A stretch of 59,531 nt of DNA from assembly GCF_001194135.2 (NCBI RefSeq), contig NC_068985.1, positions 17,417,707 to 17,477,237 on the forward strand, in the 5' to 3' direction. The DNA comes from Octopus bimaculoides (Eukaryota). Below, piece after piece: positions 22,800 to 57,410 of this stretch. Numbering within the stretch: position 1 is the stretch's first letter; every line of letters begins with the position of its first letter. The translations under genes were made by a program, and so were the position numbers. Below the pieces are notes generated by a model. That model saw only the letters and a program-made list of their open reading frames with translations. It did not search any database and was not told the origin of the DNA.

Positions 22800-23150
22800 T
22801 ATCAACTGTCATAGCAGTGTGGCAGACACATATCTCATACTCAAATCTTCAGTGATAATGGACTGAACTGAACCGTAACTAATTTGCACATCCTCTAATA
22901 ACTCGTAGATGGTAATTTGATGATTTCCCCTTGCAGCTGCATGCACATCTGCAATGTTTTTCTCAGTTCTGCTGGTTGTAGGTCTCCCAGAACGTTCATC
23001 AATATTGATGTTTTTCTGACCATCTTGGAAACGTCTGAACCACTCATACACTTGTGTGTGGCTCATACACTCCTCTCCATACACCTGCAACTTTGTGTTG
23101 GTCTCTGAGCAGGTATCACCATGACAACTTTCTCTGCCATGGTCAATGCA
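22800..23150 (-). mobile_element. Mariner transposase N-terminal fragment
   Basis: QVYGEECMSHTQVYEWFRRFQDG...DERSGRPTTS...ISYGSVQSIITEDLSMRYVSA. Confidence 0.9.
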
Positions 23151-23604
23151 ACAATCACATGCTACACGCCTTCCTTCCAAGTACGGCTGTAAACAGCAGA
23201 AGTGAGTTAGAATGTTCAAACTTAGTGTGCATGCACAGCAGAATTCAAGGTCGACATTTGCCAAGCAACTTGACTCAATGTGTTTTAGCTTTGTCACTAT
23301 GGCAACAGTCTGGATACTTATTGATCAGACCTTTGAACACTTAATAATACATTCAAAAATACACTACGCTGGAATATAATATGGGGTGGTCATTGTGGGA
23401 ATGTCTCTGATCATAGATCCACTCTAATTTCAGTTGATTTGGAGTTAAGAAAAGCACAACTCATTAGTAGTTTGGTAAACTCTGAAAATACATATCACAT
23501 TACAGAAGAACCTATTTTGGAGACTCTCTCTAGTATTAGTTCCATCCAGTAAATCTCATAATGATAATTCTTAATACAAAAACCTAGCTAAAATTAATTA
23601 CAAT

Positions 23605-27180: not shown

Positions 27181-27921
27181 TCAATAATAACAGCACAATT
27201 GCCAAATGTTGTGTATATAATAACGGAAAAGTTCTCCGGTTCTAGAATAAAACAGCAATAATTGGCTCCCGTAGCCTATCAATGTTATGACAGTGGCTGT
27301 AAAGTAACCATAATTACAAATCACTCTAAGTACTTGAATTTTTGATAAATGAATGAATAGTTGGATCAAAGCACAACACCAGCCTCTGTAATTTTCACCC
27401 CATAAACTAACCAATGGAATAAATACATTACAAAGAAAGTAGGAGAAAAACAGTCCTGTTAAAAGTGGTTTCATTCCAGGATGAGGGATTTTCACTAAAT
27501 CACTATACATCTTAGAAAGAAAGACAATAACCAAAACCCCAGTAATTTGTTCTAAAGCAACTTCTACAAACATATACAAAAATTCTGTTACCAAAATTGT
27601 ATAAAATTCTGCATCAGGATTGTTCCATTTTGAAATCACTTTTGATGAATTGATCACTCTTGCAAGTGTTTCAATAAGCAAAAATGTCAATGTTATTTTC
27701 CATACTGTTTTCCGACTACGATTGTGCAAGATATGGCGAAAAGCTTGTGTTTTAAGAAGAAGAGCATCCAAAAATATTAAAACAGAATCATGTTCAATGT
27801 ATTTATCAACTACTTCATTGCAGTTACTACAAACACATGTCAGTAGGCCTGAAGACAGTTTATGGAATAAATCTTTGACTCTTGTACCACAATTTATGCA
27901 TCGATAGTTATTATTCGACAT
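27181..27921 (-). CDS. ARV1: ARV1 (ER sterol homeostasis / GPI-GlcNAc transferase-associated membrane protein), 246 aa, single coding exon
   Basis: Arv1 homology domain YRCINCG...CVCSNCNEVVDKYIEHDSVLIFLDALLLKTQAFRHILHN (two CxxC), then hydrophobic segments. The first ATG is at 27921; the ORF track starts at an upstream TTG. Confidence 0.95.
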   Translation of the reverse strand: MSNNNYRCINCGTRVKDLFHKLSSGLLTCVCSNCNEVVDKYIEHDSVLIFLDALLLKTQAFRHILHNRSRKTVWKITLTFLLIETLARVINSSKVISKWNNPDAEFYTILVTEFLYMFVEVALEQITGVLVIVFLSKMYSDLVKIPHPGMKPLLTGLFFSYFLCNVFIPLVSLWGENYRGWCCALIQLFIHLSKIQVLRVICNYGYFTATVITLIGYGSQLLLFYSRTGELFRYYIHNIWQLCCYY

Positions 27922-27968
27922 TTTCAATATTTTACGATAAAGCAAAATATTTTAAGAACCCTTGACTC

Positions 27969-29910: not shown

Positions 29911-30933
29911 GGAAAGATTGTTTCGTTTTTTTATATATATATATATATATATATAAAAAGTCAAAAGGTAGTCAATGTGACTATGATGAACGTTCTCAAA
30001 TTAAAGGCGTGTATAAATCTATAAAGGTATTCCTATAGAATAGGATCGAAAATATCTAGTTGATCAAAAACCGTAATTTCTTCAGATGTGCTCTGAGCAT
30101 CTGGGATTAAAATAAAATTTAAAAATTAGGAACATATTTTTGTTCCCCACCACCTTCCTAATTTTTCAAATTTTACTGTCTTTCGAAAATATTTTTCTGT
30201 TTTATACATTAGATATCTGATATTATGATTCTTAAAAAACATCATAATCAAATTAAAATATGTACGACTTTTTAAAACATAAATTTGAAAATTTTTTTTT
30301 TTTTCAATATCGGAAAAGGGCAAGCAAAGAATTCCCCTTCCCACCTTCGTCCTTTTCTTTTTTCTTATTTTTTGTAGAATCATAAACTGCGACGCTTTTA
30401 AAAAAAAAAAAACATCCTTGCAATTATGATCTGGGTGGACTAGAGAATTATTTCCAAAGATATTCTATATGCACACCACCTCTATATATTATACTGTGTC
30501 AAAATATTTTCCTTGTTTTAATGTGTTATTCAAATATCAACTCAGTTTTACTGAACAGCATTGTATTTTAAAATGTTGCCATTATTAATGTTTAAATATC
30601 AGGAAAACGATTAATAGAATTGGTAGAGCATGGTACCAAAAAAATGTCTGCAGTTAATAGTTAAGGGCTCTTAACAGAGTTCAACCACACCGAAGTCAAT
30701 GGTACTTGCTTTATCAGAGACGATAAAATAAAGTTCCAGACAAGTACTGGGTGGTAAAGTATTCCAGATGTAAATGGAATTATAAGTGAAGATGGTATTG
30801 AAGTTATCAATAGTTGACAGATGTAGAATACGAGTGTACAAGATGTAACAGGGGAAGGAAAAACACGGGAAGAGAGAGAGAGAATTAATGCTATCTTCTC
30901 TGCCTAAGCTGATTTGATGTAGTGTGACCTGAT

Positions 30934-30941
30934 CACTTCCG
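30934..30941. promoter_or_regulatory. ETS-like motif in candidate Nova promoter
   Basis: cacttccg (reverse strand CGGAAGTG), about 400 bp upstream of the ATG in a CpG-retaining region; a single short motif. Confidence 0.3.
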
Positions 30942-31338
30942 TTTGCTGAATTAACAATTCAGTATATATTAATATTTGTTAGTTAAATACACACAGATAT
31001 TATAAAAATAATTAATTGTACTATTAATGTTTTTAAGAACATGTCTAATGGATTTTAAAATTTCGCTACATTTTATTTTTACTTCTTTTAAGCAGAAAGT
31101 CACTGCAGGAATGCAGGAAGCTACAGCGCCACCTTTCGTAAAATCTAAGGATGAATAACTCTTACGCTCAAGAAATTTGAGGTTTGTCTTGCTCTACAAG
31201 AAAGCTGTTTGCATGCAACACAAGAGAAAAAGAGGAAAATTTAACTAAGCGTCGCCGAACTAATCTTGAGGGCGACAGCAGAAAAAAGAAACACTGACGT
31301 CCTTCCTTACAGAAAGTTTTCTCCTTACATAAAGCAAG

Positions 31339-33009
31339 ATGAACGCTAGTCAGAGCGGAGGCGGTGGCAGCATGGGGTCCGATGAAATATATACCTGTGA
31401 CTATAAGTCTGGAGACAGTAGTTCTGGCGGGGCTATTAGTCTCAAGATATTGGTGCCAAACGCAATAGCAGGAGCTATCATTGGCAAAGGTGGCGAAACA
31501 ATAGCTCGAGTTCAAAATGAAGCTGGTGCTAAACTGAAAATGTCCAAGTCCAACAATTTCTATCCAGGCACGACTGAAAGGGTGTGCTTGATTACTGGGC
31601 CATTCGAAGCCGTCCGCAAAGTACATAACTTTATAATGGAAAAGATTCGTGAAAAACCAGATTTGAATACTAGATGTGACGACTATCGTGGACCTTACGA
31701 ACGAAATCAACAAATCAAAATCCTCGTCCCTAACAGCACTGCCGGTATGATAATCGGTAAAGGAGGCAATTTTATTAAACAGATTAAGGCAGAAAGCGGA
31801 GTATCAGTGCAAATATCACAGAGCCAGAAAGGTACATATATACCAGAACGATGTGTTACAATTGCAGGCGATGTGGATGGTAATAGAACGGCAGTCGATA
31901 TGATCTTACGAGTTATAGCTGAAGATCCTCAGAGTGGCTGCTGCCCTAATATAAGTTATGCTGAATTCTTGGGTCCCATGTCAGGAAACAATTCAAATGC
32001 TTTACCCTTCACTCACATGAACTATAGAAACCAAGATCAGATGGGTTTAGCAGCGAATAACAACTTGGGAACTTTCAATTTCGGATTTAACAATTTCGGA
32101 AATAATTCTAACTCTAATGTATCTAACATGAGTGTAAACAATGCTAACCTTGGTGGTGGAGGTTCAGGAGGAGGTGGTGCTGCCGGAGGAGCAATCAACA
32201 GCTCAGCACTAGAAAACTTAAAAGTAACACTTCGTAACTATGGATTCACTGACATGGCAATTGAAGAGATAGGAGCAGCGATGAGTACACTGGCTAATTA
32301 TGGTATTCTCACCAATATTGGTTTAAACCTAGGAGCCCTTAACAACTTAGGCACTGGAAGTGGTGGACTCAACCTGCAAGGCCCACAAGGTTCAAATATG
32401 ATGTCTGGTTGCAACACGCCCACTACCAGTGTTAGCAACCCGTTTGTCAATAGCAGTAACAATAACTGTATTTTTGGTCCCGTTGGCAGCTGCCCGTCAG
32501 CGATGGAGAATTTTGCATCAACATGCGCTAGTACCAGTCCCTTCAATAATTCCTCAGCAAATATGAACAGCGAGAGGTTTGGTGGTAGCCCAATGTTAAG
32601 TGATTCATTTGGCACTGCTGTCAACTACTCAATGAATAATCCAGTTTTTGCAGCAGGTCCAAGTACTTCTGGTGACCAAATGAAGAATCAAATGTCTTTT
32701 GGACATAATTCATCTGTGTACAGCCCTACAGAAGACAAGTCCGGACCGACAACGAAGAATGAAATAGAGGTTCCAGAAACAATTGTTGGAGCCATCCTCG
32801 GACCAGGTGGCAAGGGAATTGTCGAACTTCAACAGATGACCGGAACAAACATTCAGATATCAAAGAAGGGTGTGTACGTCCCTGGTACTCGAAATAGAGT
32901 GGTTACTATTACCGGTACGCCCAATAGCATCACAAAGGCTCAGATACTTATTCAACAACGTTTACAACAGGAAGAAATGAAACGGGCGCGACAACCACTG
33001 GCTCGTTAA
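31339..33009 (+). CDS. Nova: Nova/pasilla-family three-KH RNA-binding protein, 556 aa, single coding exon
   Basis: KH1 LKILVP..AGAIIGKGG...FYPGTTERVCLI; KH2 IKILVPNSTAGMIIGKGG...EDPQSG.C.NISYA; KH3 EVPETIVGAILGPGG...QISKKG..VPGTRNRVVTITG..EE.KRARQ. In-frame TAA at 31330 precedes the ATG. Confidence 0.96.
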   Translation: MNASQSGGGGSMGSDEIYTCDYKSGDSSSGGAISLKILVPNAIAGAIIGKGGETIARVQNEAGAKLKMSKSNNFYPGTTERVCLITGPFEAVRKVHNFIMEKIREKPDLNTRCDDYRGPYERNQQIKILVPNSTAGMIIGKGGNFIKQIKAESGVSVQISQSQKGTYIPERCVTIAGDVDGNRTAVDMILRVIAEDPQSGCCPNISYAEFLGPMSGNNSNALPFTHMNYRNQDQMGLAANNNLGTFNFGFNNFGNNSNSNVSNMSVNNANLGGGGSGGGGAAGGAINSSALENLKVTLRNYGFTDMAIEEIGAAMSTLANYGILTNIGLNLGALNNLGTGSGGLNLQGPQGSNMMSGCNTPTTSVSNPFVNSSNNNCIFGPVGSCPSAMENFASTCASTSPFNNSSANMNSERFGGSPMLSDSFGTAVNYSMNNPVFAAGPSTSGDQMKNQMSFGHNSSVYSPTEDKSGPTTKNEIEVPETIVGAILGPGGKGIVELQQMTGTNIQISKKGVYVPGTRNRVVTITGTPNSITKAQILIQQRLQQEEMKRARQPLAR

Positions 33010-34264
33010 TGTAATTATATATATGTATATATATATACACATATATGTGTATATATATATATTGTATGCGTGTGAAATCAAATCTCACGAGCTTCATTCT
33101 TCAAGTTTTCATTGATTATTGTGGGTTTACAAACAGGATAAAATGTACTAGATTAGAATGTTTTTAGATATTCACCACACGTGTTATAGAGGAGGTTAGC
33201 TGGTCGCTGTCATTTTCAAAAAATATCCTTTGAACATCTTTTAACTCTTCAATTTATATGTGGATAATTGTCTATATAACGGTGTAGTACTATTTCTCAC
33301 TAACATTTTTTTAGAAGTTTATTCAGTTGAAGAATTTTGGTGGCAATTTATAATGTGCCGGATCACCAGAAATATTTACACACATTACTCACACACATAT
33401 TCACACAGAATGTGTTTTATTTTCTTCATTTTTTTTTCTTTTTGCAAATAGTTTTATTTCACTTCCACTAGATAAATTGTTATTATTTATTTGTGAGTTA
33501 ACGAGAATCAGTTGGATTCTTTCCGCCAAATTTGTTTTAAATGTAATCATCTTTCTCTAGTGACTTCTCACTTAAATGGCTTGTTCATAAACTTGTTACT
33601 GTATTCATTTTGCTACAATTATTATTATTATTATTTTATTTTTTTGTTAGTGGCAGCTTTTTGCTTAATCATTTTTCATCACCTGCCGAAGAACGAACAG
33701 GACTAGGTTAGAACGAATGTTTCCCATCAAAATTTCAATTTTTTCAACTATTTTGTAAGTTCCTCTTAATTTATTAATTAGCAAAATGAAATTTGTTAAA
33801 TATTTAACTTGTGTGCGTATTGTATGTAAATAATAGTTTTTAATGCTTGTAACCATGGTATTTTCAAGTGTGGTCCCCAACTCTTATACTTTCACTTTTG
33901 ACAAACATATGTATACAGACAAATAATATTAGTTTGCAAATAAGGACTTGTGTGGTTGTACATGTGTATACACACGTGTACGTATATTTATATATATATA
34001 TGTGTGTGTATGTGTATATAAGTACGTGTGTATTCATAAGTAGTTGAATATTCAAATATATATATATATATGTTTGTACAGCGTGTATATTTGAGTGTGT
34101 GTGTATGTATATAAACGCATGTGTATACATATTTATGGGTTTATTCATATAGCTATGTATATATACTTACATTTGTGTTTATAGTCCAACCCAATCCAGC
34201 ATGGAAAAATGTACGTTAAAAGAGGATTATATATGTACACACACATTCACAAAATTATATATAT

Positions 34265-34297
<33 letters not shown>

Positions 34298-34939
34298 CTG
34301 CACACGAAGGTGAGTCATTATTTACAATGCACTTAATTTTTTCCCTACTGGCAGGAAGGTTGGTTGTGTGTTTCTCACTAGACGTGGTCTCCCTCAAATC
34401 ACTATGGGTTAGGTTTGAACTGGAAATACCAGTTAAGTAGTTATGTTCACCATGGCCACTTTGCTTTCTGTTTGCTCAAAGAAGAGCAACTTTCAGTGAT
34501 CCATTTTCTGTAGGCTAAGGGTATATCAGGGAGTGAAATCTAGTGAAAACTTTTGGCACAGTATGAGAACAGTGTGTTGTTGCAACAGACTACATAAGAA
34601 TCAGTTGAATTCAAAAACGGTTGCACAAGTGTCATGCATCAATGAGAATCTGGATGCCTGACCAACTCTCTTGTGATGACAACATTGAACTAGCTCATGA
34701 CCTAGAGCTACCAGTGAAACTGTTTGCAACTGATTTGACCTTAGTAAAGTGTATGCAAGTTGGATCATAGAAATTAAGGAACAGTTATAAGTGCATTGTG
34801 AAAATTTATTGACTCAGTCTTGTGTGTGTGTGTATATATATATATACACGCACACACACACACATGCATATGCAAATGTGTGTATGTGAAACAGGTTTTG
34901 CACAAAAACATATTTCAATATAAGTTAACATTTAGTGTT

Positions 34940-35140
34940 ACAAGGCAGCAAGCTAGCGGAATTGTTAGCACACTGGACAAAATGCTTATTAGCATTTCTT
35001 CTATTAATTCAAATGCTGCCGATGTCAACTTTGCCTTTCATCCTTCTGGGCTTGATAAAATAAGTACCTGATTAGCAATGGGGTCAATGTAATCGACTTC
35101 TCCCTTCCCTCAAAATTACCGGCCTTATGCCAAAATTAGA
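34940..35140 (+). mobile_element. Family B SINE
   Basis: gtcaactttgcctttcatccttctgggcttgataaaataagtacc...gccttatgccaaaatt. Confidence 0.8.
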
Positions 35141-38100
35141 ATTTAGATAGTGTTGAATGGATCTTCTCACTGAAATTGGTCTGTTTTTATTTATGAAAGA
35201 TTAAACCTTAAAGGACATTTTCTTCTTCCTTCATATTTCTATAAGAAGTTAGGATAAAATTATATCTGAAATTTCTATTCAAATTCTTATGACCATTAAA
35301 CATACTTTCTATCTGGTTCCATTCTTCAGTTTGTTCACAGATGAATTCTCACAAAAACCAATCATTTCTGTATTTCATTACATAATCTCAATTCTTTCAA
35401 CATATTTGTTTCTTCTATTCCTTTATCAATTATATGTTTATTTGACAGATAAAATAGGTGGTGATTATAACATCTTAACATTTGAAATAGTCCTTGTATT
35501 CCTGCTGAAAGTTATGTCCATTTTTAAAGAGATAAGTTTTTTTTTTTTTTTTTTAGTTTTTTTTTTAAACATAATTTTCATTAAAAAGTTGCTTTTGATT
35601 TCATGGAAAGCATTTAAATATATGGTTGAAAAATACATTACAAATATTCTGGTATGGCATTACCATTGTCTTTCAAGTCTATTCTTAGAAGTGTTTCATA
35701 TATTTACACATTTTTTTGTTCATTCCAATACACCAGATTGTATCGAACATTGACACATGTTAATACAAAAAATATTTCTAATTATAACTTGAATAAGACA
35801 TCTTACATTGATACTGAACTTTAATGTAAAGTATACACATTTAGTCATTGTAGGAGCCATGCTTAATCTCTTAAATATATGCAGTTTTTGCTTGCCTACT
35901 ATTTATTTCATATAGATATATGGCTAAAAGTTACCCTCATCTTACAAGGATCTGACAGTTTATTTTCATCCATAGTCTATTAAGATACATCTAAATATGG
36001 CTGGTAATTCTGAAATCTGTGAGAATAATTAAACACCACACTAATTATTGAAGAACACAGCTATGTTTTCCTTTCATTTGCATTGATTATATATCCATGA
36101 TATACAAATATTCACTCATAATAAACAAGAAATGAAACAATTTAGCTGATGATTTAGGTGATTTAATATTCATTAAATATATCAAACTATGTAGAAAATT
36201 GTATTTTAATTTACACAAATTAATCATTAAATTAGTTATATGTTACATCTTCAGTGTTACCATCCACCAAAAGTTTTTATCTTTATACTTACACAAACAC
36301 ACACACACACATATATATATATATAGATATGAAATGATCACTTTTTGTTCGAATATTTATAGTCTGAACTCAACAGACTGTAACTGTTGAAAAACCTGGA
36401 ACTCTATAGACATTTTATTATGTATGTGATAAATGCTACATTTTGTTTTTAATTTTGCTCTTTCACCTAACACATCTAGTCATACTTTTCCCTTTATACA
36501 TCATCACCATCATCTTCTAGTTTATCTATCTCTTTGATGTTCACTACTATTGGAGCTCCTCCTAATGGCTTTTATAAATCCTGATTTCAAGGAGTTGGTG
36601 ATAGCAGACATAAGATTTGAGCCTAGTTTACTTTTCTCTGGTTAAATTTTAAGGTGCTGTTGCCTGCTTTGGACTTGAAGGGTTTATTTAAAGTTTTGGC
36701 ATTTTTATATACATAATATTCTATTAACTCACTAACATACAGAAAACAAATTTCCACTTCATTGTAAATGTTTCAAACAATATTTATTATTTTATCAGAT
36801 TAGTTTTCATGCAATTCAGTGTAACATCCTTTAAGTTACACAATAAGCCTCATAATCCTTAAGTTTACAAGTTCTATTCATTCATTAAAAGAGCATTAAC
36901 TGTGATATTTATTTCTAAGACTTGGTCTCATAAACAGTTGCCTTCTTAGACTAGGTATCTTACAGATCTTTTTCATTTGTTATTTTTTAACTGCTTCACT
37001 TTGGTGGGCTATTGCATGTACTGTTAAGCGTTTTAAATCATTCAGCTTCTCTTATTTTCTTTTTTCTTTTTATAGAAGGAAAAAAATGTGTAAATGACAT
37101 TGAACTGCCAACATAATGAATGAATAGATGTTATTTCTAAAATTATGCCTGGGAGATGTATATCCTTTATAGCAATTATATTGCTATTAAACAACACTAA
37201 AAGTTTTGAGATTTAAATTTATTTGAGAATCAACAAAATTTATCCACCATTCTACTACATTGTAAATAGCCCACACTAAGACAACTTAACTTATATACAG
37301 AAGCATTTTCACATAATATCAAATTACTGCCAAATTTATTGACAAAGTCCAAGTTATCTTCTATTTTAAATCACATTTTGTAATCACTAAATTTAATATT
37401 TGTTGAATGTGAACACCAAGTACAGAAATTGACTCCTTAGACAAAAACAATCTTGGTTTAGTACATATATTCGATGAAGGAAAGGAAAAAATAACTAACT
37501 TGATTCTAAAATGTTTCATTTTATATTTTGTAAAAATATTGTAATTTTTCTTCCATTTTTTTTTTTTTTCTGTCTTAGTTAAATTTATGAGCTGCACTTA
37601 TTTCACAAATGATTTAATCTGAGATTGTATTGAAATTAAAATAATTGCATCATGGAAGAATGATACTAACTATTTAAAATATATACACACTTTTATATTT
37701 TTCTGTTGTAATTTTGTAATAATAGCATGTTAATAATATATGTGTATTAATTACATATATATATATATTATGTACACTTGCTATCATTACAAAAATAATA
37801 ATGCAGATGTGAGTATAACATGTGCATGTGTGTTTTAATCGCTACTATGATTCTACAACAATACTATTGTGTTGGTTATACTTAGTTATATAGAGATATA
37901 TGAGTACTTAGTTTATTTCCTAGAGTCTGTACATTTGAAGTGGCTGACCACTCTACTGGACATAGCATTTCATTTAATGTTTGATGTTTATCAAGTATAT
38001 AGGTGTCATTGAGCTACATCTGATGTGGAGTAATATGTAGTAGAACATGTGCAAAATAGAGAACAGATTTTGTAGCTGTATGCCATTGATGTCAAATATA

Positions 38101-41100
38101 ATACATTAGGAGAAAGACAGTGAGAGAAATAATGAAAAAGTGTATATATATATGTATGTATATATATAATCATAAGCTAATTAGATAACTTACAATTAAC
38201 AATTCTATATTGACGAATTAAAATATTTATGAACATCTACATTACCCACCAAAAAAAATCTTTTTTTTTTCAATGTGTCAATGTGTATATGCATTTGTAC
38301 ATAGGTATAACATTATATATGTGTGTGTATATATACACATACACACGTGTGTGTGTGTGTGTACACATATATATATGTATGTATAATATGTTGTTGTATA
38401 TTGTGTTTGTAATACTTTTATATTCATTTATAATACATTTATATGTATACACATAAACTATATGCAAACAAGTCTACATATGTAACCTACAATTACATAT
38501 ACATGTATATATATTTATACATAAACATGTGTGTGTATTCATAAAATGTTAGTTTAGTGAGTCAGATCCTTGTGTTCTCAAGCTTAACATTTTTCTTATT
38601 TTTTTGTCCGATTTAAAAATTACTTTCCTGTTTCTTTGTCTTGAGTGAGTTTGTCCTAAAAACAGTTTCCTGTTTTATGTTAGGAGTTTAGAAAACATTT
38701 TTTAATTTTTTTTATTTAATTCATTCTTTATAATCTTGTTCTTCACACTTGATTTCTAATGTTTTGTGCCAAAGTGTATGAACTCTTATTACAGAAGATG
38801 GCAATAATTACAGTGCTATGACAAATATAATTACTTGCTTGTAATCAAAATATACTCATCATTTTATAGTCACTTAATCTAGGAAGACCATTCCTGTATA
38901 TATATATATTTATATATATATATATATATAGGTTTAATATATAACCTATTAAATCATTTATTAAATTGTTTTCCTTCAAATTTTAAAATTAAAACCATAA
39001 TTAAAAGGCTTGCCATGACAATCTTTCTTGGCTGACACTGTTAGAAATTATTTATGGTTCAATAAAAATAATATAAATTATATCCCTACACACACACACC
39101 CACCCACCTTTTCATATTTTGTCAATGTTTGGTTTCTGTTGTTTAAATTCATATATGCAAATTAACATGATGGTGCATATTATCATAAAATTATAACAAT
39201 ATAATTGTGTCTTCTCTCACAAAATAAGTTTTAAATGCTTTTCAAGATTATCTCTAAAGCCTTCATTGCATTATAACAATTAAATTATAAGTATGTTATT
39301 TGTTGATAATATATCCCTCCTTGTCATGTTGCTGTTCCCTTTTAAAGAATTTTATAAAACATCATACTGTTCCATTTATGTTTCCTTTTTAATCAGCAAT
39401 GCTTTCTTTCTTGGAATTTCAAGGCCAACTATTTCAATTTTGAGAAGACAGTCTGTTGCTTTCATTTGTCTTCTAAATATATTTACTGATGCAATAAAAA
39501 TTCAGGATATTTTACATTTAGTTCATATTAATTAATCTTGTTCAGCATTTTGTTAAGATCTTCACACTACAGATGTACACACATTTACTAATCATAAAGC
39601 TGTTGCTTATTGCAAGTCTTCATATTTTAATTTGTGCATCCAACTAACAATTAAAAATTGTGAGTTCTTTCATTTTCTTTATCTACATAAGTAATCTTTG
39701 TTGACATTTGTATTTAGCCTATATATTCAGAGAAATACATAATGCCTACATGGTTTTCATAAAAAAATAAAACTAGATAATATATGGATATGAGTTTGAT
39801 GGAAAGTTTATTTTTTACAAAAACAAAAGTATATTGAAGATTTTTACCATTAAAAGAACTTATCTATCTACACAGTTACTTTTTTAGATTTCTTTTAATA
39901 AACAAATGCCACCTTTTTCTTCTTTTTTTTTTTAATTCTTATATAAGTGTTAATAACTATGAAATAGTCAACTATATAAACTTGTTCTGTAGGATTCTGC
40001 TCTATAATTGCATAGAGATCAATTACTAAGTATAGAGAACTCATGAAATTTGCCATAGTATTTTATAATGTAGTTCTAAGTATTGTAGGTTTCTTTCTAT
40101 AAAATATTCTCATGTTTTGTTATTGTAGCTGGCAAGGTTATACAATTTTCTTAAATACATTTTTTTTTATGAGCTATCATGATCTATGCCTATTTTTAAG
40201 TATTGATATTTGATTAAAGTAGAATTTCAATGTACATGTTTTTAGATATGATTTTTGTATTCGAATACATTTTTTACAAACTAGATGATAAAATCGTTTT
40301 TAATTATTATTTCTAATTAACTAAAACACATTATTTTCTATTGCAAATTTTGGGGAAATGGCAATGTAAAACTAGTTGTTGCAGTCATTTGAGAGTGCCT
40401 ATCTTGTAAATATATCTCACAGTCATTACTGAAAATTTGAAACATTTGTGTTTAAAAAGGAAAACTAGTATTTGCTTCTTTGGTAAATCTCTTTTCTATG
40501 TGGAAAAAATATATCACAGATTTAAACTACTGTTCTATGTGCTTCTATGTAGAACTGCATTAATTTTCATTTTATTTTATTTTTATTTTTATTCTGTCGT
40601 TCATAAAATTATTAATATATGAAGAATAGCATGTTTACAACTTTTAATTTCCATTTTATTATGGCATATTTGTAACGACATATTTACATATATCATTATT
40701 TTTAACTCATTGTTATTTATTAACTTTCTGAGAAAAATATTTTTTTATTTCCTTCTGTCACTATAATTTTTTTTTTATTTTGAAATGTTTTCTACAAGTT
40801 CCATTAATTCCATGAAATTTTGATTCCATGTGAAAAGAAATAACTATTGAAAACTTTCATTATTTCATTAAGGAACTAATTTCCCTTCATTTCCTTATTG
40901 CTTTACCTTTTAACATTACGACTTATAAGAGGCTTCAGTATTTAATCTGCATTAAGGAAATCCTGTGGTTTTATATATGTAATGAGAAAAAAAATTAGTT
41001 TTATATTTAAAATTTTATTTCTGCTGTTGGCTGTTTCATTACATCTTCATGCATAGCAAAAAACAAGCAAACAACATGTATTCCTCTGTTAATTGTTGAT

Positions 41101-42279
41101 GTGGAATATTTGTTGTATATCATCCTTCACAGCATTTATATAGTGATATTCTTTATCTTAGGGCATAAACATTATATCTAGCATTTTTATTTCATTTCCA
41201 CTGGTTTCCTTTTATTTGAAAAAAAAAAAAAAAAATTCCAATAAAGTATGAAGCATTTTATGATTGTAATGATTATAATTTCTGTGACAAATTTGTTGGA
41301 TTTAATGATGGAGGGAAAACATCTTTTGTTGTTGTGGGAATAGCTTATGCACACAATTCACTATTATTATCTGCTCAAATATATGTTATATTCGTATGCA
41401 TTATGTTTTTTCAAATATTTGGTGTGAATTCTATGATAGACAGAAATGGTATTATATTACGCTTATATGCAGGTTGTTTAGAATAAGGAAATATCAAAAA
41501 ACTTCCATAAATTGTTAAAAGTTTTGTCTGACTATGAACCAAGTGAATTAAAATGTGTTGGAAATAATATTTTACTATTAGATTCTTGTATACATTTAAA
41601 CATATGTACTTTGAATATTACAGTTATTTGTTGAGACTAATAATCCATAGAATCAATACATTATTTAAGTGCATTGTTGATTGTAATTTCTTTTTCTTCC
41701 AATTTGGTTGAATTCCATATATCCACAGCTGTTTTATAATTATATAATAATCAGGAAATTTACTAATGTTCTTATTGAATACTTTTCAATTTTTAATTCA
41801 ATATTTAATTATTCTTAGATCATTATGGCATTTTTATTTGGTTGTGATAATGCTAATCAGAACATTGTACCAGAAAAATCAGATATATGTATGCATTCAT
41901 ACACAATCACACATCATATGACAAATGTTTTGAAACAACAAGTTGGTACAAAAATGTTATTTCACTCTTCATGTTTTGCAATGATATTTGATCAAAAATA
42001 TGGTCAAATCTTCTAGAAAGGGGTTTTCTTTAAAATCTTTAATGTACGTCTTCTCAATTATAATGGATATACCCAGGTCTGCCAAATCACTCTACCATTT
42101 GAACTCTAACAAAATATCCCATAAATATTGCTTGAATGATAAATTAATTTGAGACACTTTTTTATATTTGATCTCTATTGTAAATATCTGTTGGTCATAT
42201 TTGTCTGTTGCTAGGGAAATAATAGATATTTAGATAACTTTTAATATTCAAATATCAAGTGTTCATAAAAGTATTTCAT

Positions 42280-42760
42280 CTTATTTTAACAATAACTTCA
42301 AGAAGTATAAAATCTTTTCATAATCTAAAGCAAGGAATATGACTGTCATGTATACTATTTGAGTATTGATCACATTGTTATGAAGTGATTCAAATTTAAT
42401 TTGGACAAATGTTGAACTCCTTACTAGCACTAAAGAACCTGCTATAGAGTTCTTTGCTTTCACCAGTTCTTTCTACTTTAATGTCCTCAGGAATTTGGAT
42501 CATCATCACCTCATATTGTTAACCACATAATCGTTATCATAATCCAGCAATACTCTTATGGTCATGTGATGTTGTCACTAACGCTTTGGGATTGAAAGTT
42601 TCAAAACAGCTCTTAGAGGCTATATATGGCTTGGAATATCCCAAAAGTATTTTGTTATGTCATCCACTGTACCTAAGGTTTTATGTATTTCTTCAGTTAT
42701 TGCAAAATTGTCATCAATACTTACTTCTATGGAATTAATTCCCGAAAACCTGATTAATTC
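42280..42760 (-). mobile_element. Possible highly decayed LINE RT remnant
   Basis: SIDDNFAITEE (YADD-like) and KAKNSI..L...IKFESLHNNVINTQIVY (KA..L..K..LY..V..LLY-like); weak similarity. Confidence 0.3.
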
Positions 42761-45700
42761 CATATTGAAGTAAATTTTTATCTTTAAAAAAAAGTCAAAA
42801 AGAATGCTATTATCTATTCGAAATATAATTATCAAAGAGTTTGTTTTAAAACAAAGAAACAAAAAATGGATCCAAACTAATGCCAGTGCAACATCTTTTT
42901 TGTTAATTTTACTGAATATAAATTATTTTCAAAATAGTTAATAGATTTCTCAGTTGTCATTTGTTTTTTGTTTGTTTGTTTTTTTATTTTTATTTTTTTT
43001 ACATGCCTATTCATCAGAAAAGAGGGGCCGGCATTGTCTTATTGTTTTAAGAACGACTTTGTTGTTACTCTTTGTAACTTTTTCAAAGGGAAGTTGATAT
43101 AAATCGAAATTTTATAATTCTGGAAGGAAATGGGTTTGCTCTCTTTCACACACTCACACATACAAACATATGCACATAATTGAAAATATTCTATAAAATT
43201 CAACTTTTCTCATTTATTACATTAAATATATTTTGTTTATAAAATTTCCAAGATTTTTTTTTTCTTTTTTTTTCTACAAACACATAACATTATTCTTGTT
43301 ATTCAAACATTTTGAACTTTACACAATTTGGTTTTCATTTGTTAGTATTTTATTTTAACCGTCCCATTACAGAAATCACATAACCACATTTTAAGCCTGG
43401 ATAACAGTTTTGTCGTGTTTTCGATACCCTCAGATATTTGCTTTGATGCTGTTTATAGGATAGTTTAATGCAGATAATACTGAATCTAGAAACTCAGCTT
43501 CTTAGGTGATAATTACTATTCTCAATCATGAGAGCAAACTGACGATTATTAGAATTCAAACAAACCATAGTTTACTTTTAAGTATTGGCAAGCGGTGACA
43601 TAATTCTTAAATATGTATCTCCTAAGTGTTTAGTGATTTTAATATAATGAAAGTAAAGTGAAAGAAATTTCGATATTGCATGTATTGTTTGTGCCTATGA
43701 ATATTTCTTTCCTTTCATATAAAAAAAATCATTTTAACTTTCCCTCTACATTAGCAAAATGAGATATGTGTGATGGAGAGAGAGAGAAAGATGCAGGTAC
43801 CATAGACCAGATCATATTACTCTCTTTTTCTAAAGAAATGTTTTTGATACTTGTCATCCATCAACTGATAAAATTAGTTTGATATATATCTACTTACTTT
43901 TATGTTATAAACTTTTAGCAAAACCATTTGATTTATTATATGAAAGGAGTGATTGAATTGAATCCACTTTCAATAGATACATTTATTATTGACTGTTGAT
44001 CAATAAGAACGCAAGTGTAATCCTGACCTTATCAATTAAAGTCATTGGATCAGTCTCATTTGAATATTGGTTTCTTTTATGTATTCATTATGTATAGAGT
44101 ATCTGAAATTGCATCAGATCTTCATCATAACTGGACTACTAAAGCTAAGTGTTTCTATAGATTTAATTTGAGGAGAATTGTCAGTTATGTTAATTCTGAT
44201 GCAATTTTTAGGCCTTGGTTAATGTTGTTTAAATATCTAGCATATGTAATCAGGATCCTTTTCTAAAGTGAATGTTAATGAAAAAGGCATGGAAACAAAT
44301 CTGTGCTTGTAAGGTTGTAAAGCTTTTTCTCGCATAATTATTGAAATAGACTGGCATTTATTAATCAGGTTGGAAAAATTGACAGTTTGCACATACAGCA
44401 CTACTATCATCATTCTTTCCATCCAGAATATTAGGTACCGCTGTTTTGCCATTTGTTTACCAGAATTCTTGTTTCTCTGTCTGTTCCATTATCTCAGAAA
44501 ACGCTAAAACTAGGCAGTTTAAATCTTTTTATGAAATGATTACTGAATAAAGTGGGGTGGTAGATTGCAGAATTATTTGAAGTCCACAGTATTACTCTTA
44601 CTGTTTTATTTGCTAATCAAACTAGATGATGTATCAAAAGAAATAAAAATATTCCTTCTGATAGTGGTAGCTACAAAAGGGTTAATTAATAGTGGGAAAT
44701 ACTAACTGTATTATGTAAAAAAATTATATTTTTATCATATATTCTTAAAAGAGAATGGTAAGGGAATCACATCACAGCCCAACTTGTAAAAATATATAAG
44801 CAACCCTAAATGACTAGAAATTTACAAGAAAAAAAAGATTGGTTAAAACCCATCTTTTATTTTTATCAGTTTTTTTTTTTAAGTTTGCATTTTGACAATT
44901 TTTTTTTTTCTTTGTTTAATGTCCTCAAAAATAATATTCCTACACTTTGTACAACACAAAATTTCAGTCTAAAATCTGCTTTCATTTTGATGCTTTTGGC
45001 AGTATTTTTTGTTTGTAAACTACTTCTCACAATAATTATTTTTATTTATTTAATGAATTTATCTTTCATTCTACTTTATATAATATTTTAATTTTGATAT
45101 GCATTTAGCAGATTTTTATCAGGTTTCATATTTTCTTTGAGTCGGTTATATTTTTGTTGGCTTCCATGAGGAAATGCAGGGTGTCTTTTTTTTTTCCGCC
45201 TTCCCCCCATTTTGTCTTTGGCTCTCGTTCTCATTTAGGGAAACATGCTAGTTAAAGACAACAAAATACTTTACTGAAGGACATAATCCAATAGCTGCAG
45301 TGGAATGTTAATTTTCACTATTACTTCAGCTAATCAATCATCAGAAATTTGCATTTTTTTTTTTTTTTTTTTTAATAGAAAAAACTCCCTGAACCAAGAC
45401 TATTTTATACATTCTGAAAACACTTTTCCCTTCAGTTTCATATGTGTATGAGCATTCACCATCATCCTTTTCAAGATAAAAATTGTGTTAATGCTTCATG
45501 CGTGTATGTGAGGTTGTGTGTGTATATGTGTATATATACTTATATGTATATATACACACATATATATGAATGCGCATCAGTTATATAATGATTGAATCTT
45601 AATATCATTCATATAGTTATATATCAACTTGTGTTAAAAAAATGTTCCTCAATTTGCTAACGAGTTATTATGCAGAAGATGAAGCAGTTCTGTTTACACT

Positions 45701-56529: not shown

Positions 56530-57410
56530 AAGATGTATGGTTTGTACATTGTAGGTGATGTATGAGAGTCCAGATTGAATCAGACTCAAGCTGGCTGTAG
56601 ACAAGTGTACCACCATGCATTTTGGGAGGAAAAACACACTGTCCACATACTCTTTCTATAACATTGATATCAAGAAGTCTTCTTGTGGACATGACCTGGG
56701 CATTGCTGTCAGCAGCGATTTGTGCTGGACAAAGCACATCTCTAAAATTGTCAAGAAGGCTGGAAGTGTCTTGGCATCACTCAGCAAGACCTTTGGCAGC
56801 CGCTCTCCAGCTATCTATTTAAGGTTGTATATGGCTATGATGCAGCCACACTTGGAATTAGCATCACCAGTCTGGAGCCCCTACCTGGCTCAGGACATTG
56901 ACCTCCTGGAAACTGTTCAGAGACATGCAACCAAGCAAATACCCTCCATCAGGCATCTGCCATACTTTGAACATCTTGTTTCTCTGGGTATAGATACATT
57001 GAAGCTCCAACGTCTGGCAACTGACTTGGTAAGCACACACAAAATTATTAACCATCGTGCCAACAACCACCTTGAACACCTTTTTGAGCTCCATGTGTCT
57101 AACACACGTGGGCATACATACCTACAAAGTCAGAAAACAATACAGCCCCCATGACTTTCAGAAACATTTTTTCATACTCAGAGTTGCTGAAGCATGGAAC
57201 AAACTACCTGCATCAGCTGTTAGTTGCCAAGCCATTGCATCCTTTAAAACCTCCATGCTTCCTGAAATTCGCCAACACTACACCTGATATTGCTCCCTCC
57301 ATATGCATGCACACATGTATATCATGGCTCATATACTGTTCACTTTCCTGACATTTGCACTTTTGATGAGCTGTAGTGCACGTGAGCACTATACACAATA
57401 ATTTCATTAT
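56530..57410 (+). mobile_element. 5'-truncated CR1-clade LINE (RT C-terminus and 3' UTR)
   Basis: DKC..MHFGRKN...DLGIAVSSDL.W.KHI...PHLE.ASPVWSPY...DIDLLE.VQR.ATK...KHFF..RV.EAWN.LP; frameshifted. Confidence 0.92.

What the first reader, a model, noticed from the sequence alone, without database searches (positions are those of the whole stretch)
31339..33009. Fully intronless Nova-family gene: candidate retro-derived paralog of a neural splicing regulator
Seen: one 556-aa ORF holds all three KH domains with intact GxxG loops. Conserved Nova segments are altered, e.g. ISYAEFLGPMSGNNSN where NOVA1 has ISYANVTGPVANSNP. Established: vertebrate NOVA1/2 and fly pasilla have introns, bind YCAY and regulate neuronal RNA processing. 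Inference: an intact, diverged retrocopy under selection, adding a Nova-type regulator in a lineage with a large nervous system.
Basis: partly seen in the sequence, partly recalled or inferred. Interest (0 to 1): 0.75.

Follow-up and report, generated by a model that had tools for sequence, protein, structure and literature searches.

The report
Ancient intronless Nova retrogene in octopus
This is an intact, expressed, intron-free extra copy of the neuronal RNA-binding gene Nova in Octopus vulgaris, made long ago from a spliced mRNA, kept under strong selection in octopuses, argonauts and cuttlefish alongside the normal multi-exon Nova gene, and lacking that gene's N-terminal nuclear-import segment.

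Summary
Window 31339-33009 (+) is a 556-aa ORF with three KH domains whose closest solved relatives are NOVA1 KH1/2 and NOVA2 KH3. The window is Octopus vulgaris chromosome OX597818.

The retrocopy interpretation is supported. A canonical Nova gene with six GT-AG coding introns lies on another chromosome. Five of those intron positions fall inside the uninterrupted window ORF, and two are shared with the limpet Lottia, so they are ancestral.

Intronless orthologues exist in O. sinensis, Argonauta hians and the cuttlefish Acanthosepion pharaonis (80% identity). The canonical gene coexists with them, so the copy predates the octopus-cuttlefish split.

Selection is strongly purifying: dN/dS is 0.03. 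RNA assemblies from several studies show one unspliced transcript starting at about 31119-31170, at a promoter/5'UTR block conserved to cuttlefish.

The protein starts just after the conserved N-terminal NLS region. KH3 is unchanged at invariant sites. KH1, KH2 and the post-KH2 motif carry fixed lineage-specific changes.

Tissue expression, YCAY binding, localisation and presence in Nautilus could not be tested. I found no paper describing it. I rate it a new member of a known kind, of moderate interest.

The parts
31103..31230 (+). Conserved promoter/5'UTR block at the transcript start
   Evidence: blastn gives octopus vs cuttlefish 78% over 78 nt, E 3.6e-10. The three-species alignment A1 shows invariant runs such as ACTGCAG.AA..C.GGAAGC and TTGCATGCAACAC. 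RNA contigs begin at 31119, 31155, 31169 and 31170.
31119..31338 (+). 5'UTR, unspliced, with start sites spread over about 31119-31170
   Evidence: Contigs from X1, X2, X8 and X10 end at 31119-31170 with no joined upstream exon. Raw reads (X24) have zero depth at 30752-31191 and no joints.
31339..33009 (+). Single-exon CDS, 556 aa, Nova/Pasilla-family protein (identical to CAI9722860.1)
   Evidence: The parental intron positions map to uninterrupted sequence at about codon 9/10, about codons 23-29, 31567|31568 (YP|GT, phase 1), 31713|31714 (QQ|IK, phase 0) and 31867|31868 (IA|GD, phase 1).
31432..31653 (+). KH1 (aa 32-105), GKGG at aa 49-52
   Evidence: The AF2 model has a beta-alpha-alpha-beta-beta-alpha fold with pLDDT 78-89. 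It matches 2ann_A with TMt 0.95, rmsd 1.6 A. Nine retro-specific changes fall at invariant mollusc sites.
31714..31923 (+). KH2 (aa 126-195), GKGG at aa 140-143
   Evidence: There are ten retro-specific changes; five lie in the variable loop (K162, S163, E165, N167, L168) and three at the end of the last helix.
31924..32043 (+). Post-KH2 motif (aa 196-235), strongly diverged
Evidence: It is 45% identical to the canonical octopus gene, whereas that gene is 90-92% identical to other molluscs here. Twelve retro-specific changes were counted.
32200..32316 (+). Conserved two-helix module in the linker (aa 288-326)
   Evidence: AF2 predicts helices at 288-300, 305-320 and 323-326 with pLDDT about 80. 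Invariant columns L298, R299, G302, I311, A314, L318, Y321 and G322 hold across 20 bilaterian Novas.
32752..32988 (+). KH3 (aa 472-550), GPGG at aa 488-491
   Evidence: It matches 1ec6 (NOVA2 KH3-RNA) at E 1.2e-22 and with TMt 0.92, 59% identity. There are no retro-specific changes at invariant sites, and it is 87% identical to the canonical octopus gene.
33010..34018 (+). 3'UTR, minimum extent (may run to about 43.2 kb)
   Evidence: RNA contig 33032-34018. Identity to Argonauta is 75% over 33014-33797. No AATAAA or ATTAAA occurs in 33010-34300. Collinear RNA contigs continue to about 43.2-44.9 kb, but repeats break them and the strand is unknown.

Best explanation
The locus is an old, functional retrogene of the cephalopod Nova/Pasilla gene.

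Origin. A spliced Nova mRNA carried the cephalopod-type exon 2 and skipped the alternative exon 3. It was reverse-transcribed and inserted on another chromosome before octopods and decapodiforms diverged. That split is roughly 250-300 million years old by my recollection of published dates. The copy acquired or retained its own promoter, which is conserved from octopus to cuttlefish, and it is transcribed as a mono-exonic mRNA.

Protein. It keeps the Nova architecture: KH1, KH2, a disordered linker with a small helical module, and KH3. KH3 is essentially unchanged, so the protein most likely still binds YCAY-type RNA elements (inferred).

Divergence. After duplication the copy went through a burst of change that then became fixed. 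The N-terminal 33 residues, which hold the Nova bipartite nuclear-import signal, were lost. Substitutions accumulated in KH1, in the KH2 variable loop and in the otherwise near-invariant post-KH2 motif. Since then it has been under strong purifying selection.

Likely role (inferred). The most likely consequence is a division of labour with the canonical gene. The retrogene escapes the canonical gene's alternative splicing, and it may be biased toward cytoplasmic RNA regulation or toward different partners and targets.
For: Shown by tools:
- The 556-aa ORF has three KH domains. Its nearest solved relatives are NOVA1 KH1/2 and NOVA2 KH3 by sequence and by fold.
- The canonical paralog lies on a different chromosome and has six GT-AG CDS introns, identical in O. 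vulgaris and Argonauta.
- Five of those positions are uninterrupted in the window ORF, and two are shared in position and phase with Lottia.
- Intronless orthologues occur in Argonauta (L005) and Acanthosepion pharaonis (L003, 564-aa ORF, 80% identity).
- The canonical gene, with its intron, is in the same cuttlefish run ERR3431203.
- The exon-2 signature DDYSCEYKSDS / DEIYTCDYKSGDS is shared only with the cephalopod canonical gene.
- The retro clade has 100% bootstrap support. Mollusca including the retro clade gets 97-100%, and retro plus cephalopod canonical gets 69-96% with gamma-corrected distances.
- dN/dS is 0.031 (dS 0.54) for O. vulgaris vs Argonauta, and dN is only 0.088 vs cuttlefish.
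- Unspliced RNA contigs occur in runs from several studies.
- A conserved 5' block sits at the transcript start.
- The start codon sits right after the NLS-equivalent KR, with an upstream in-frame stop in octopus, Argonauta and cuttlefish.
- The NOVA1 NLS is at aa 24-40 (PMC3842248).
- Domain-wise substitution pattern: KH3 has 0 changes, KH1 9, KH2 10 and the post-KH2 motif 12 at invariant sites.
Against: - Retroposition scars are absent. There is no poly(A) remnant, no target-site duplication and no residual homology to the parental UTRs. That is expected at this age but means the mechanism is inferred from intron absence.
- Uncorrected NJ places the retro clade outside the other mollusc Novas. 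The retro plus canonical clade gets only 40% without gamma correction and 0-46% on sub-regions. The cephalopod-lineage origin therefore rests partly on the exon-2 signature and on the absence of retro-type sequences in other molluscs.
- A C-terminal KRAR fits a monopartite NLS consensus and occurs in all mollusc Novas, so loss of nuclear import is not established.
- RNA binding, tissue specificity and localisation are untested.
- The 3'UTR structure is unresolved, so an intron there is not excluded.
Confidence: 0.85

Rival explanations
1. It is an ancient DNA-level paralog. It arose by segmental or whole-gene duplication at or before the base of Mollusca, lost all its introns one by one, and was lost from every non-cephalopod lineage.
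For: Uncorrected NJ puts the retro clade as sister to all other mollusc Novas, including the cephalopod canonical gene (58% vs 40%). Only 2 of 10 canonical-gene-specific residues are shared. The third octopus paralog shows that intron-poor Nova copies retaining an ancestral intron do exist.
Against: All five mapped introns are absent at once and the locus is on another chromosome with no flanking homology. The exon-2 signature is shared only with the cephalopod canonical gene. KH3 is closer to the cephalopod canonical gene (87%) than that gene is to other molluscs (76-81%). Gamma correction moves support to retro plus canonical (69-96%). No retro-type hit from any non-cephalopod appears among 811 homologues.
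Confidence: 0.07
2. It is a transcribed processed pseudogene or a dispensable redundant copy with no function of its own.
For: Expression in the one raw-read run is low, at depth 2-7 with 6% of the run read. No tissue or protein evidence could be obtained.
Against: The ORF is intact in at least five species across the octopod-decapod split. dN/dS is 0.03, as low as the canonical gene's 0.037. KH1 is 97% identical between octopus and cuttlefish. The promoter/5'UTR is conserved.
Confidence: 0.02
3. It is a retrogene but functionally equivalent to canonical Nova: a nuclear splicing regulator that differs only in where and when it is expressed. It would enter the nucleus through the C-terminal KRAR or by dimerising with canonical Nova.
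For: KH3 is unchanged at invariant sites and all GxxG loops are intact. The predicted KH1/2 tandem superposes on NOVA1 at 1.6 A. The C-terminal KRAR is present. The gene has its own conserved promoter.
Against: The whole conserved N-terminal NLS region is missing in all orthologues. Fifty substitutions fall at sites invariant in eight other molluscs plus the canonical gene, 36 of them fixed across coleoids, and they concentrate in KH1, the KH2 loop and the post-KH2 motif. That argues for changed rather than merely relocated function.
Confidence: 0.3

Closest known systems
Vertebrate NOVA1/NOVA2 and Drosophila Pasilla (Nova family of KH-domain neuronal splicing regulators)
   Same: It has the same three-KH architecture and intact GxxG loops. 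KH1/2 is 51% and KH3 is 57-63% identical to the human domains, with near-superposable predicted folds. The helical linker module is conserved.
   Different: It has no introns and lacks the N-terminal bipartite NLS region. The post-KH2 ISYA..GPVA..NPTGSP motif is diverged. It is a lineage-specific extra copy made by retroposition, not by genome duplication as for NOVA1/NOVA2 (the latter from my own knowledge).
Canonical cephalopod Nova gene (O. sinensis XP_029648571.1 and isoforms; O. vulgaris locus on OX597829)
   Same: It is the closest relative overall, at 64-66% identity on conserved columns and 87% in KH3. It shares the exon-2 motif.
   Different: The canonical gene has 7 coding exons, at least 10 annotated isoforms, the N-terminal NLS region and an alternative exon 3. 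Its dN is 3.4 times lower and its dS 4 times lower than the retrogene's.
Functional retrogenes of RNA-binding proteins in mammals, such as the retroposed hnRNP and PABP paralogs (recalled from my own knowledge, not tested here)
   Same: These are intronless copies of multi-exon RBP genes on another chromosome that are expressed, stay under purifying selection and diverge asymmetrically from a slow-evolving parent.
   Different: This one is much older (coleoid-wide). It lies in a mollusc lineage where retrogenes are little described, and it involves Nova, for which I found no report of a retrogene.

Membership tests
Nova/Pasilla family | Three type-I KH domains arranged KH1-KH2-long linker-C-terminal KH3 | tested here: met
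   Pfam finds KH_1 three times. AF2 secondary structure shows beta-alpha-alpha-beta-beta-alpha at 32-105, 126-195 and 472-550.
Nova/Pasilla family | Nearest relatives by sequence and fold are Nova KH domains rather than PCBP, hnRNP K, IMP or FUBP | tested here: met
   By sequence, 2ann scores 7.7e-48 against the next family at 1.3e-15. Foldseek gives 2anr/2ann at 5.6e-19 to 9.2e-19 and 1ec6 with TMt 0.92. All top database hits are named Nova or Pasilla.
Nova/Pasilla family | Intact GxxG RNA-binding loops in all three KH domains | tested here: met
   GKGG at 49-52, GKGG at 140-143 and GPGG at 488-491. The GPGG form is shared by all mollusc Novas.
Nova/Pasilla family | N-terminal bipartite nuclear localisation signal (DSRKRP...KR) preceding KH1 | tested here: not met
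   The protein starts at the residue after the second basic cluster, and an in-frame stop lies upstream in octopus, Argonauta and cuttlefish. NLS position is taken from PMC3842248.
Nova/Pasilla family | Sequence-specific binding of YCAY clusters | not testable with these tools
   Only inferred, from KH3 conservation: 0 changes at invariant sites.
Nova/Pasilla family | Neuron-enriched expression | not testable with these tools
   The RNA runs are coded without tissue labels. Searching the run accessions in the literature found nothing.
Functional retrogene | All parental introns are absent from the region copied | tested here: met
   Five parental CDS intron positions are uninterrupted in the ORF, and the 5'UTR is unspliced. 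The 3'UTR is unresolved.
Functional retrogene | A multi-exon parent exists elsewhere in the same genome and its introns are ancestral | tested here: met
   The parent is on OX597829 and the copy on OX597818. The same structure is found in Argonauta. Lottia shares the phase-0 and phase-1 introns.
Functional retrogene | Poly(A) remnant and target-site duplications | tested here: inconclusive
   There is no parental UTR homology. The only A-run (A17) is 8 kb downstream at 41219. Such scars are not expected to survive at this age.
Functional retrogene | Transcribed and under purifying selection (distinguishes it from a processed pseudogene) | tested here: met
   RNA contigs and reads; dN/dS 0.031; intact orthologues across coleoids.

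The most novel reading that the evidence does not exclude
Coleoid cephalopods split the two roles of Nova between two genes. The canonical, heavily spliced, NLS-bearing gene would keep nuclear splicing control. The NLS-less retrogene, fixed more than 250 million years ago, would specialise in cytoplasmic or dendritic RNA regulation (localisation, stability, translation) or in modulating canonical Nova by heterodimerisation. Together with the octopod-specific third paralog, this would be an expansion of a neuronal RNA regulator in a second large-brained lineage, convergent with vertebrate NOVA1/NOVA2.
Probability: 0.2. Interest if true: 0.7.

Novelty: new member of a known kind. Interest (0 to 1): 0.5.

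Why it matters
Nova proteins are master regulators of neuron-specific RNA processing. Vertebrates have two and flies have one. Coleoid cephalopods are the classic independent case of a large, complex nervous system, and they are known for unusual RNA-level regulation such as extensive A-to-I recoding.

This work shows that they carry a second, retro-derived Nova that has been conserved for hundreds of millions of years, and that octopods carry a third copy. That gives a concrete, testable candidate for lineage-specific rewiring of neuronal RNA regulation.

The loss of the nuclear-import segment, combined with an unchanged KH3, makes a clear prediction about localisation and function. It can be tested with tagged proteins, CLIP or RBNS, and existing octopus brain atlases.

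It also flags annotation problems. The cuttlefish gene model is mis-spliced, the gene names are inconsistent (Nova-2-like, Pasilla-like isoform X8), and a neighbouring gene does not appear in the gene calls returned for these loci.

Tried and rejected
1. A "fossil" of the parental N-terminal NLS coding sequence upstream of the ATG. A frame-shifted KRRRTNLEGDSRKKK looked suggestive, but tblastn and blastn give E of about 1-10 and it is not conserved in cuttlefish. Rejected as unsupported.
2. Residual homology between the parental 5' flank or 3'UTR and the window flanks. Only simple-repeat hits were found.
3. Uncorrected NJ trees on the whole protein and on sub-regions. They placed the two fast paralogs basally with weak support, and I treat that as long-branch attraction. 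Gamma-corrected NJ without the third paralog gives retro plus canonical at 69-96%, depending on alpha. The parsimony-moment estimate of alpha is 1.67, which is likely too high. No ML software was available.
4. Counting shared derived residues. There are too few informative columns: 10, of which 2 are shared and 5 are not.
6. Tissue labels. The word filter accepts only SRA library terms, and run accessions were not found in papers.
7. The name "isoform X8". It suggested alternative isoforms, but the O. sinensis RefSeq entry has a single product and the RNA shows no joints. It is a transferred label.
8. Rfam scan of the window. No matches.
9. Literature searches for a cephalopod Nova retrogene found nothing relevant.
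Full report
**1. What is at the coordinates**

One search lists an ORF at 31339..33009 on the + strand, 556 aa, starting at ATG. An in-frame TAA lies three codons upstream.
- Pfam finds three KH_1 domains (E 1.7e-45).
- The best solved relatives are NOVA1 KH1/KH2 (2ann, 7.7e-48, query aa 30-198) and NOVA2/NOVA1 KH3 (1ec6 at 1.2e-22; 1dt4), well ahead of PCBP, IMP, FUBP and hnRNP K.
- An AlphaFold2 model built on a 20-sequence alignment gives three beta-alpha-alpha-beta-beta-alpha domains at aa 32-105, 126-195 and 472-550. It also gives a confident two-helix module at 288-326, with disorder elsewhere.
- Foldseek returns 2ann_A (TMt 0.95, rmsd 1.6 A, 51% identity) and 1ec6_B (TMt 0.92, 59% identity).
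- The GxxG loops are intact: GKGG 49-52, GKGG 140-143, GPGG 488-491. The GPGG form is shared by all mollusc Novas.

**2. Source organism and other Nova loci**

The protein is 100% identical to CAI9722860.1 of Octopus vulgaris. The window is the reverse strand of chromosome OX597818.1 at about 48.66 Mb.

O. vulgaris has two more Nova-family loci:
- **Canonical gene.** It lies on OX597829.1 (L002) and corresponds to the O. sinensis "Nova-1" isoforms X1-X10.
- **Third paralog.** P0145 lies on OX597826.1 (L011).

The label "isoform X8" on the window protein is a transferred name. The O. sinensis RefSeq orthologue XP_036359094.1 ("Nova-2-like") has a single product.

**3. Intron mapping**

The canonical gene has six GT-AG introns in its CDS. 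In P0003 coordinates they fall after aa 39 (phase 1), 56 (1), 94 (1), 141 (1), 190 (0) and 241 (1). O. vulgaris and Argonauta hians are identical in this.

Projected through an alignment, five of the six positions fall inside the uninterrupted window ORF:

| Position in window protein | Context |
|---|---|
| about aa 9 | N-terminal region |
| about aa 23-29 | two introns flanking alternative exon 3, which is absent from the window gene |
| aa 76 | YP\|GT, phase 1 |
| aa 125 | QQ\|IK, phase 0 |
| aa 176 | IA\|GD, phase 1 |

The limpet Lottia gigantea shares the last two positions, with the same phases, so those introns are ancestral and the intronless state is derived.

The evidence for retroposition of a spliced mRNA rather than DNA duplication is:
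- all mapped introns are absent at once;
- the locus is on a different chromosome;
- there is no flanking or UTR homology to the canonical locus.

Classic scars (poly(A), target-site duplications) are not detectable, as expected for an old event.

**4. Age and distribution**

Intronless orthologues occur in:
- O. sinensis and a further octopus, both 556 aa;
- Argonauta hians, 554 aa (L005, a single tblastn match);
- the cuttlefish Acanthosepion pharaonis (L003 8001-9695, an uninterrupted 564-aa ORF, 80% identical);
- several Logan assemblies of decapodiform type.

The deposited cuttlefish model (P0004, 334 aa) removes KH2 and the linker with a spurious intron, although the ORF is continuous.

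The canonical gene's last exon, preceded by a separate KH exon and an intron, is in the same cuttlefish run (ERR3431203) as the retro gene. Both genes therefore coexist in octopods and in a decapodiform, and the retroposition predates their split. No Nautilus sequence was available.

**5. Origin within the cephalopod lineage**

Three lines of evidence support it:
- **Identity.** On conserved columns the retro clade is 64-66% identical to the cephalopod canonical gene and 56-62% to other molluscs. In KH3 it is 87% identical to the canonical gene, whereas that gene is only 76-81% identical to other molluscs.
- **Exon-2 signature.** The N-terminal motif encoded by canonical exon 2 (TIGTPDDYSCEYKSDS) matches the retro protein (SMGSDEIYTCDYKSGDS). 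No other mollusc in the alignment has this form.
- **Distribution.** No retro-type sequence from a non-cephalopod appears among 811 homologues.

The trees are less clear:
- Uncorrected NJ pulls both fast paralogs to the base of the molluscs.
- With the third paralog removed and gamma-corrected distances, Mollusca including the retro clade gets 97-100% bootstrap.
- Retro plus canonical-cephalopod gets 69% (alpha 1.67, a parsimony-moment estimate that is probably too high), 76-77% (alpha 1-1.2), 86% (0.8), 92% (0.5) and 96% (0.3), against 40% with no correction.

I regard the cephalopod-lineage origin as likely but not proven.

**6. Selection**

Nei-Gojobori estimates:

| Comparison | dS | dN | omega |
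|---|---|---|---|
| Retro gene, O. vulgaris vs Argonauta | 0.538 | 0.0165 | 0.031 |
| Canonical gene, same species pair | 0.129 | 0.0048 | 0.037 |
| Retro gene, octopus vs cuttlefish | saturated | 0.088 | not estimable |

By region, omega for the retro gene (O. vulgaris vs Argonauta) is 0.016 for KH1+KH2, 0.032 for the linker and 0.046 for KH3.

The retro gene evolves about 3.4 times faster than the canonical gene at non-synonymous sites, but it is under equally strong purifying selection. It is not a pseudogene.

**7. How the protein diverged**

Of 255 columns invariant in eight other molluscs plus the canonical octopus gene, the retro clade differs at 50, and 36 of these are fixed in all five retro sequences.

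| Region | Retro-specific changes at invariant sites |
|---|---|
| N-terminus (alignment unreliable) | 5 |
| KH1 | 9 |
| KH2 | 10 (five in the variable loop 160-169, three at the end of the last helix) |
| Post-KH2 motif | 12 |
| Linker | 14 |
| KH3 | 0 |

- The post-KH2 motif is 45% identical to the canonical gene, whereas the canonical gene is 90-92% identical to other molluscs there.
- KH1 is 97% identical between octopus and cuttlefish.
- The pattern is an early burst of change followed by a freeze, which is typical of a duplicate that acquired a modified role.

The protein begins at the position corresponding to canonical aa 34. It lacks MAMSFDGMNGSDMDTSDSRKRPSDAESDSGVTKR, a segment conserved from brachiopods to molluscs in the alignment. 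By position this segment corresponds to the NOVA1 NLS at aa 24-40 (PMC3842248). The truncated start, with an upstream in-frame stop, is conserved in octopus, Argonauta and cuttlefish.

The helical linker module is retained. By my recollection of the human sequence it corresponds to the region of the NOVA1 NES (aa 318-335); I did not verify this mapping.

A C-terminal KRAR could still act as a weak monopartite NLS, so a cytoplasmic bias is an inference, not a result.

**8. Expression and gene structure**

Eighteen runs of the same organism, from six studies, hold 100% of the sampled words of the CDS. Fourteen of them, from five studies, are typed as RNA and four are of unstated type.
- Contigs collinear with the genome span 31119-33049 (X1, depth 71), 31169- (X2), 31155- (X8), 31170- (X10) and 31282- (X4). 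None has a joint or an attached upstream exon.
- Raw reads (X24) cover the CDS at depth 2-7 with 6% of the run read. They drop to zero at 30752-31191 and show no splice joints.
- The transcript starts coincide with a block (31103-31230) conserved in Argonauta and cuttlefish (blastn E 3.6e-10; alignment A1).
- Contigs break at the (TA)n repeat just after the stop codon. A 3'UTR contig covers 33032-34018, and the sequence is 75% conserved with Argonauta over about 0.8 kb.
- There is no AATAAA or ATTAAA within 1.3 kb of the stop. Collinear RNA contigs continue to about 43-45 kb, and in X10 the depth peaks at 41.2-43.2 kb. That fits a 3'UTR of up to about 10 kb, but it is unproven.

**9. Comparison with what is known, and novelty**

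The gene passes the structural and sequence tests for the Nova/Pasilla family but fails one conserved feature, the N-terminal NLS region. It passes the tests for a functional retrogene except for scars, which is inconclusive.

The gene is present in public annotations under inconsistent names. Five literature searches found no description of a cephalopod Nova retrogene or a Nova family expansion in cephalopods.

I classify it as a new member of a known kind: a conserved retrogene paralog of a well-known RNA-binding protein family. It is of moderate interest because of the lineage, the age, the NLS loss and the parallel with the vertebrate NOVA1/NOVA2 pair.

Noticed in passing
window 27181-27945 (- strand; likely ATG at 27921): A single-exon Arv1-family gene (Pfam PF04161, E 1.5e-30) lies head-to-head with the Nova retrogene, with their 5' ends about 2.3-2.8 kb apart. 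It is expressed as an unspliced RNA contig at 26808-28848 (depth 163 in X1). The same arrangement is conserved in Argonauta (84% aa identity, dN/dS 0.064), but it was not found within 8 kb upstream in cuttlefish. It is absent from the gene calls returned for L001 and L005. It may be a second intronless (retro?) gene.
   Followed up: partly
L011 3001-5706 (O. vulgaris OX597826.1), protein P0145: This is a third Nova-family paralog, 551 aa. It keeps exactly one ancestral intron (phase 0 at RQ|VKIL, with a 25-aa exon extension), lacks the KH1 and KH2 introns, and has a novel phase-2 intron in the linker. It was found only in octopods (O. bimaculoides 93%, Argonauta 66%) and evolves fast. It cannot derive from the intronless gene.
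   Followed up: partly
L002 and L010 (canonical Nova CDS, O. vulgaris vs Argonauta): The canonical Nova gene has an unusually low synonymous divergence. Its dS is 0.129, against 0.538 for the retrogene and 1.26 for the Arv1-like gene in the same species pair. This suggests strong constraint on synonymous sites, possibly from splicing signals, RNA structure or editing.
   Followed up: no
L003 8001-9695 (Acanthosepion pharaonis CAHIKZ030005499.1): The deposited 'NOVA' gene model (P0004, 334 aa) splices out KH2 and most of the linker, although the genome has a continuous 564-aa ORF identical to P0002. It is a probable annotation error.
   Followed up: yes
window 31213-31248 (and 31151-31180): The 5'UTR has short upstream ORFs. 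The uATG inside the TTGCATGCAACAC block at 31213 is conserved in Argonauta and cuttlefish, so it is a possible site of translational control.
   Followed up: no
window 33060-44900: There is collinear RNA signal for about 10 kb downstream of the stop. The first 1.3 kb has no canonical poly(A) signal, an A17 run sits at 41219, and depth in X10 peaks at 41.2-43.2 kb. This is either a very long 3'UTR or separate transcripts.
   Followed up: partly
window 22809-23297 (-), 56615-57154 (+), and many (TG)n/(TA)n tracts such as 33010-33060 and 34257-34655: These are transposon remnants and microsatellites. One ORF has a Mos1-type HTH domain (PF17906, 1.7e-05). Another looks to me like the C-terminal part of a LINE reverse transcriptase but has no Pfam hit. 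The dense microsatellites attract huge read depth and break the RNA assemblies.
   Followed up: partly
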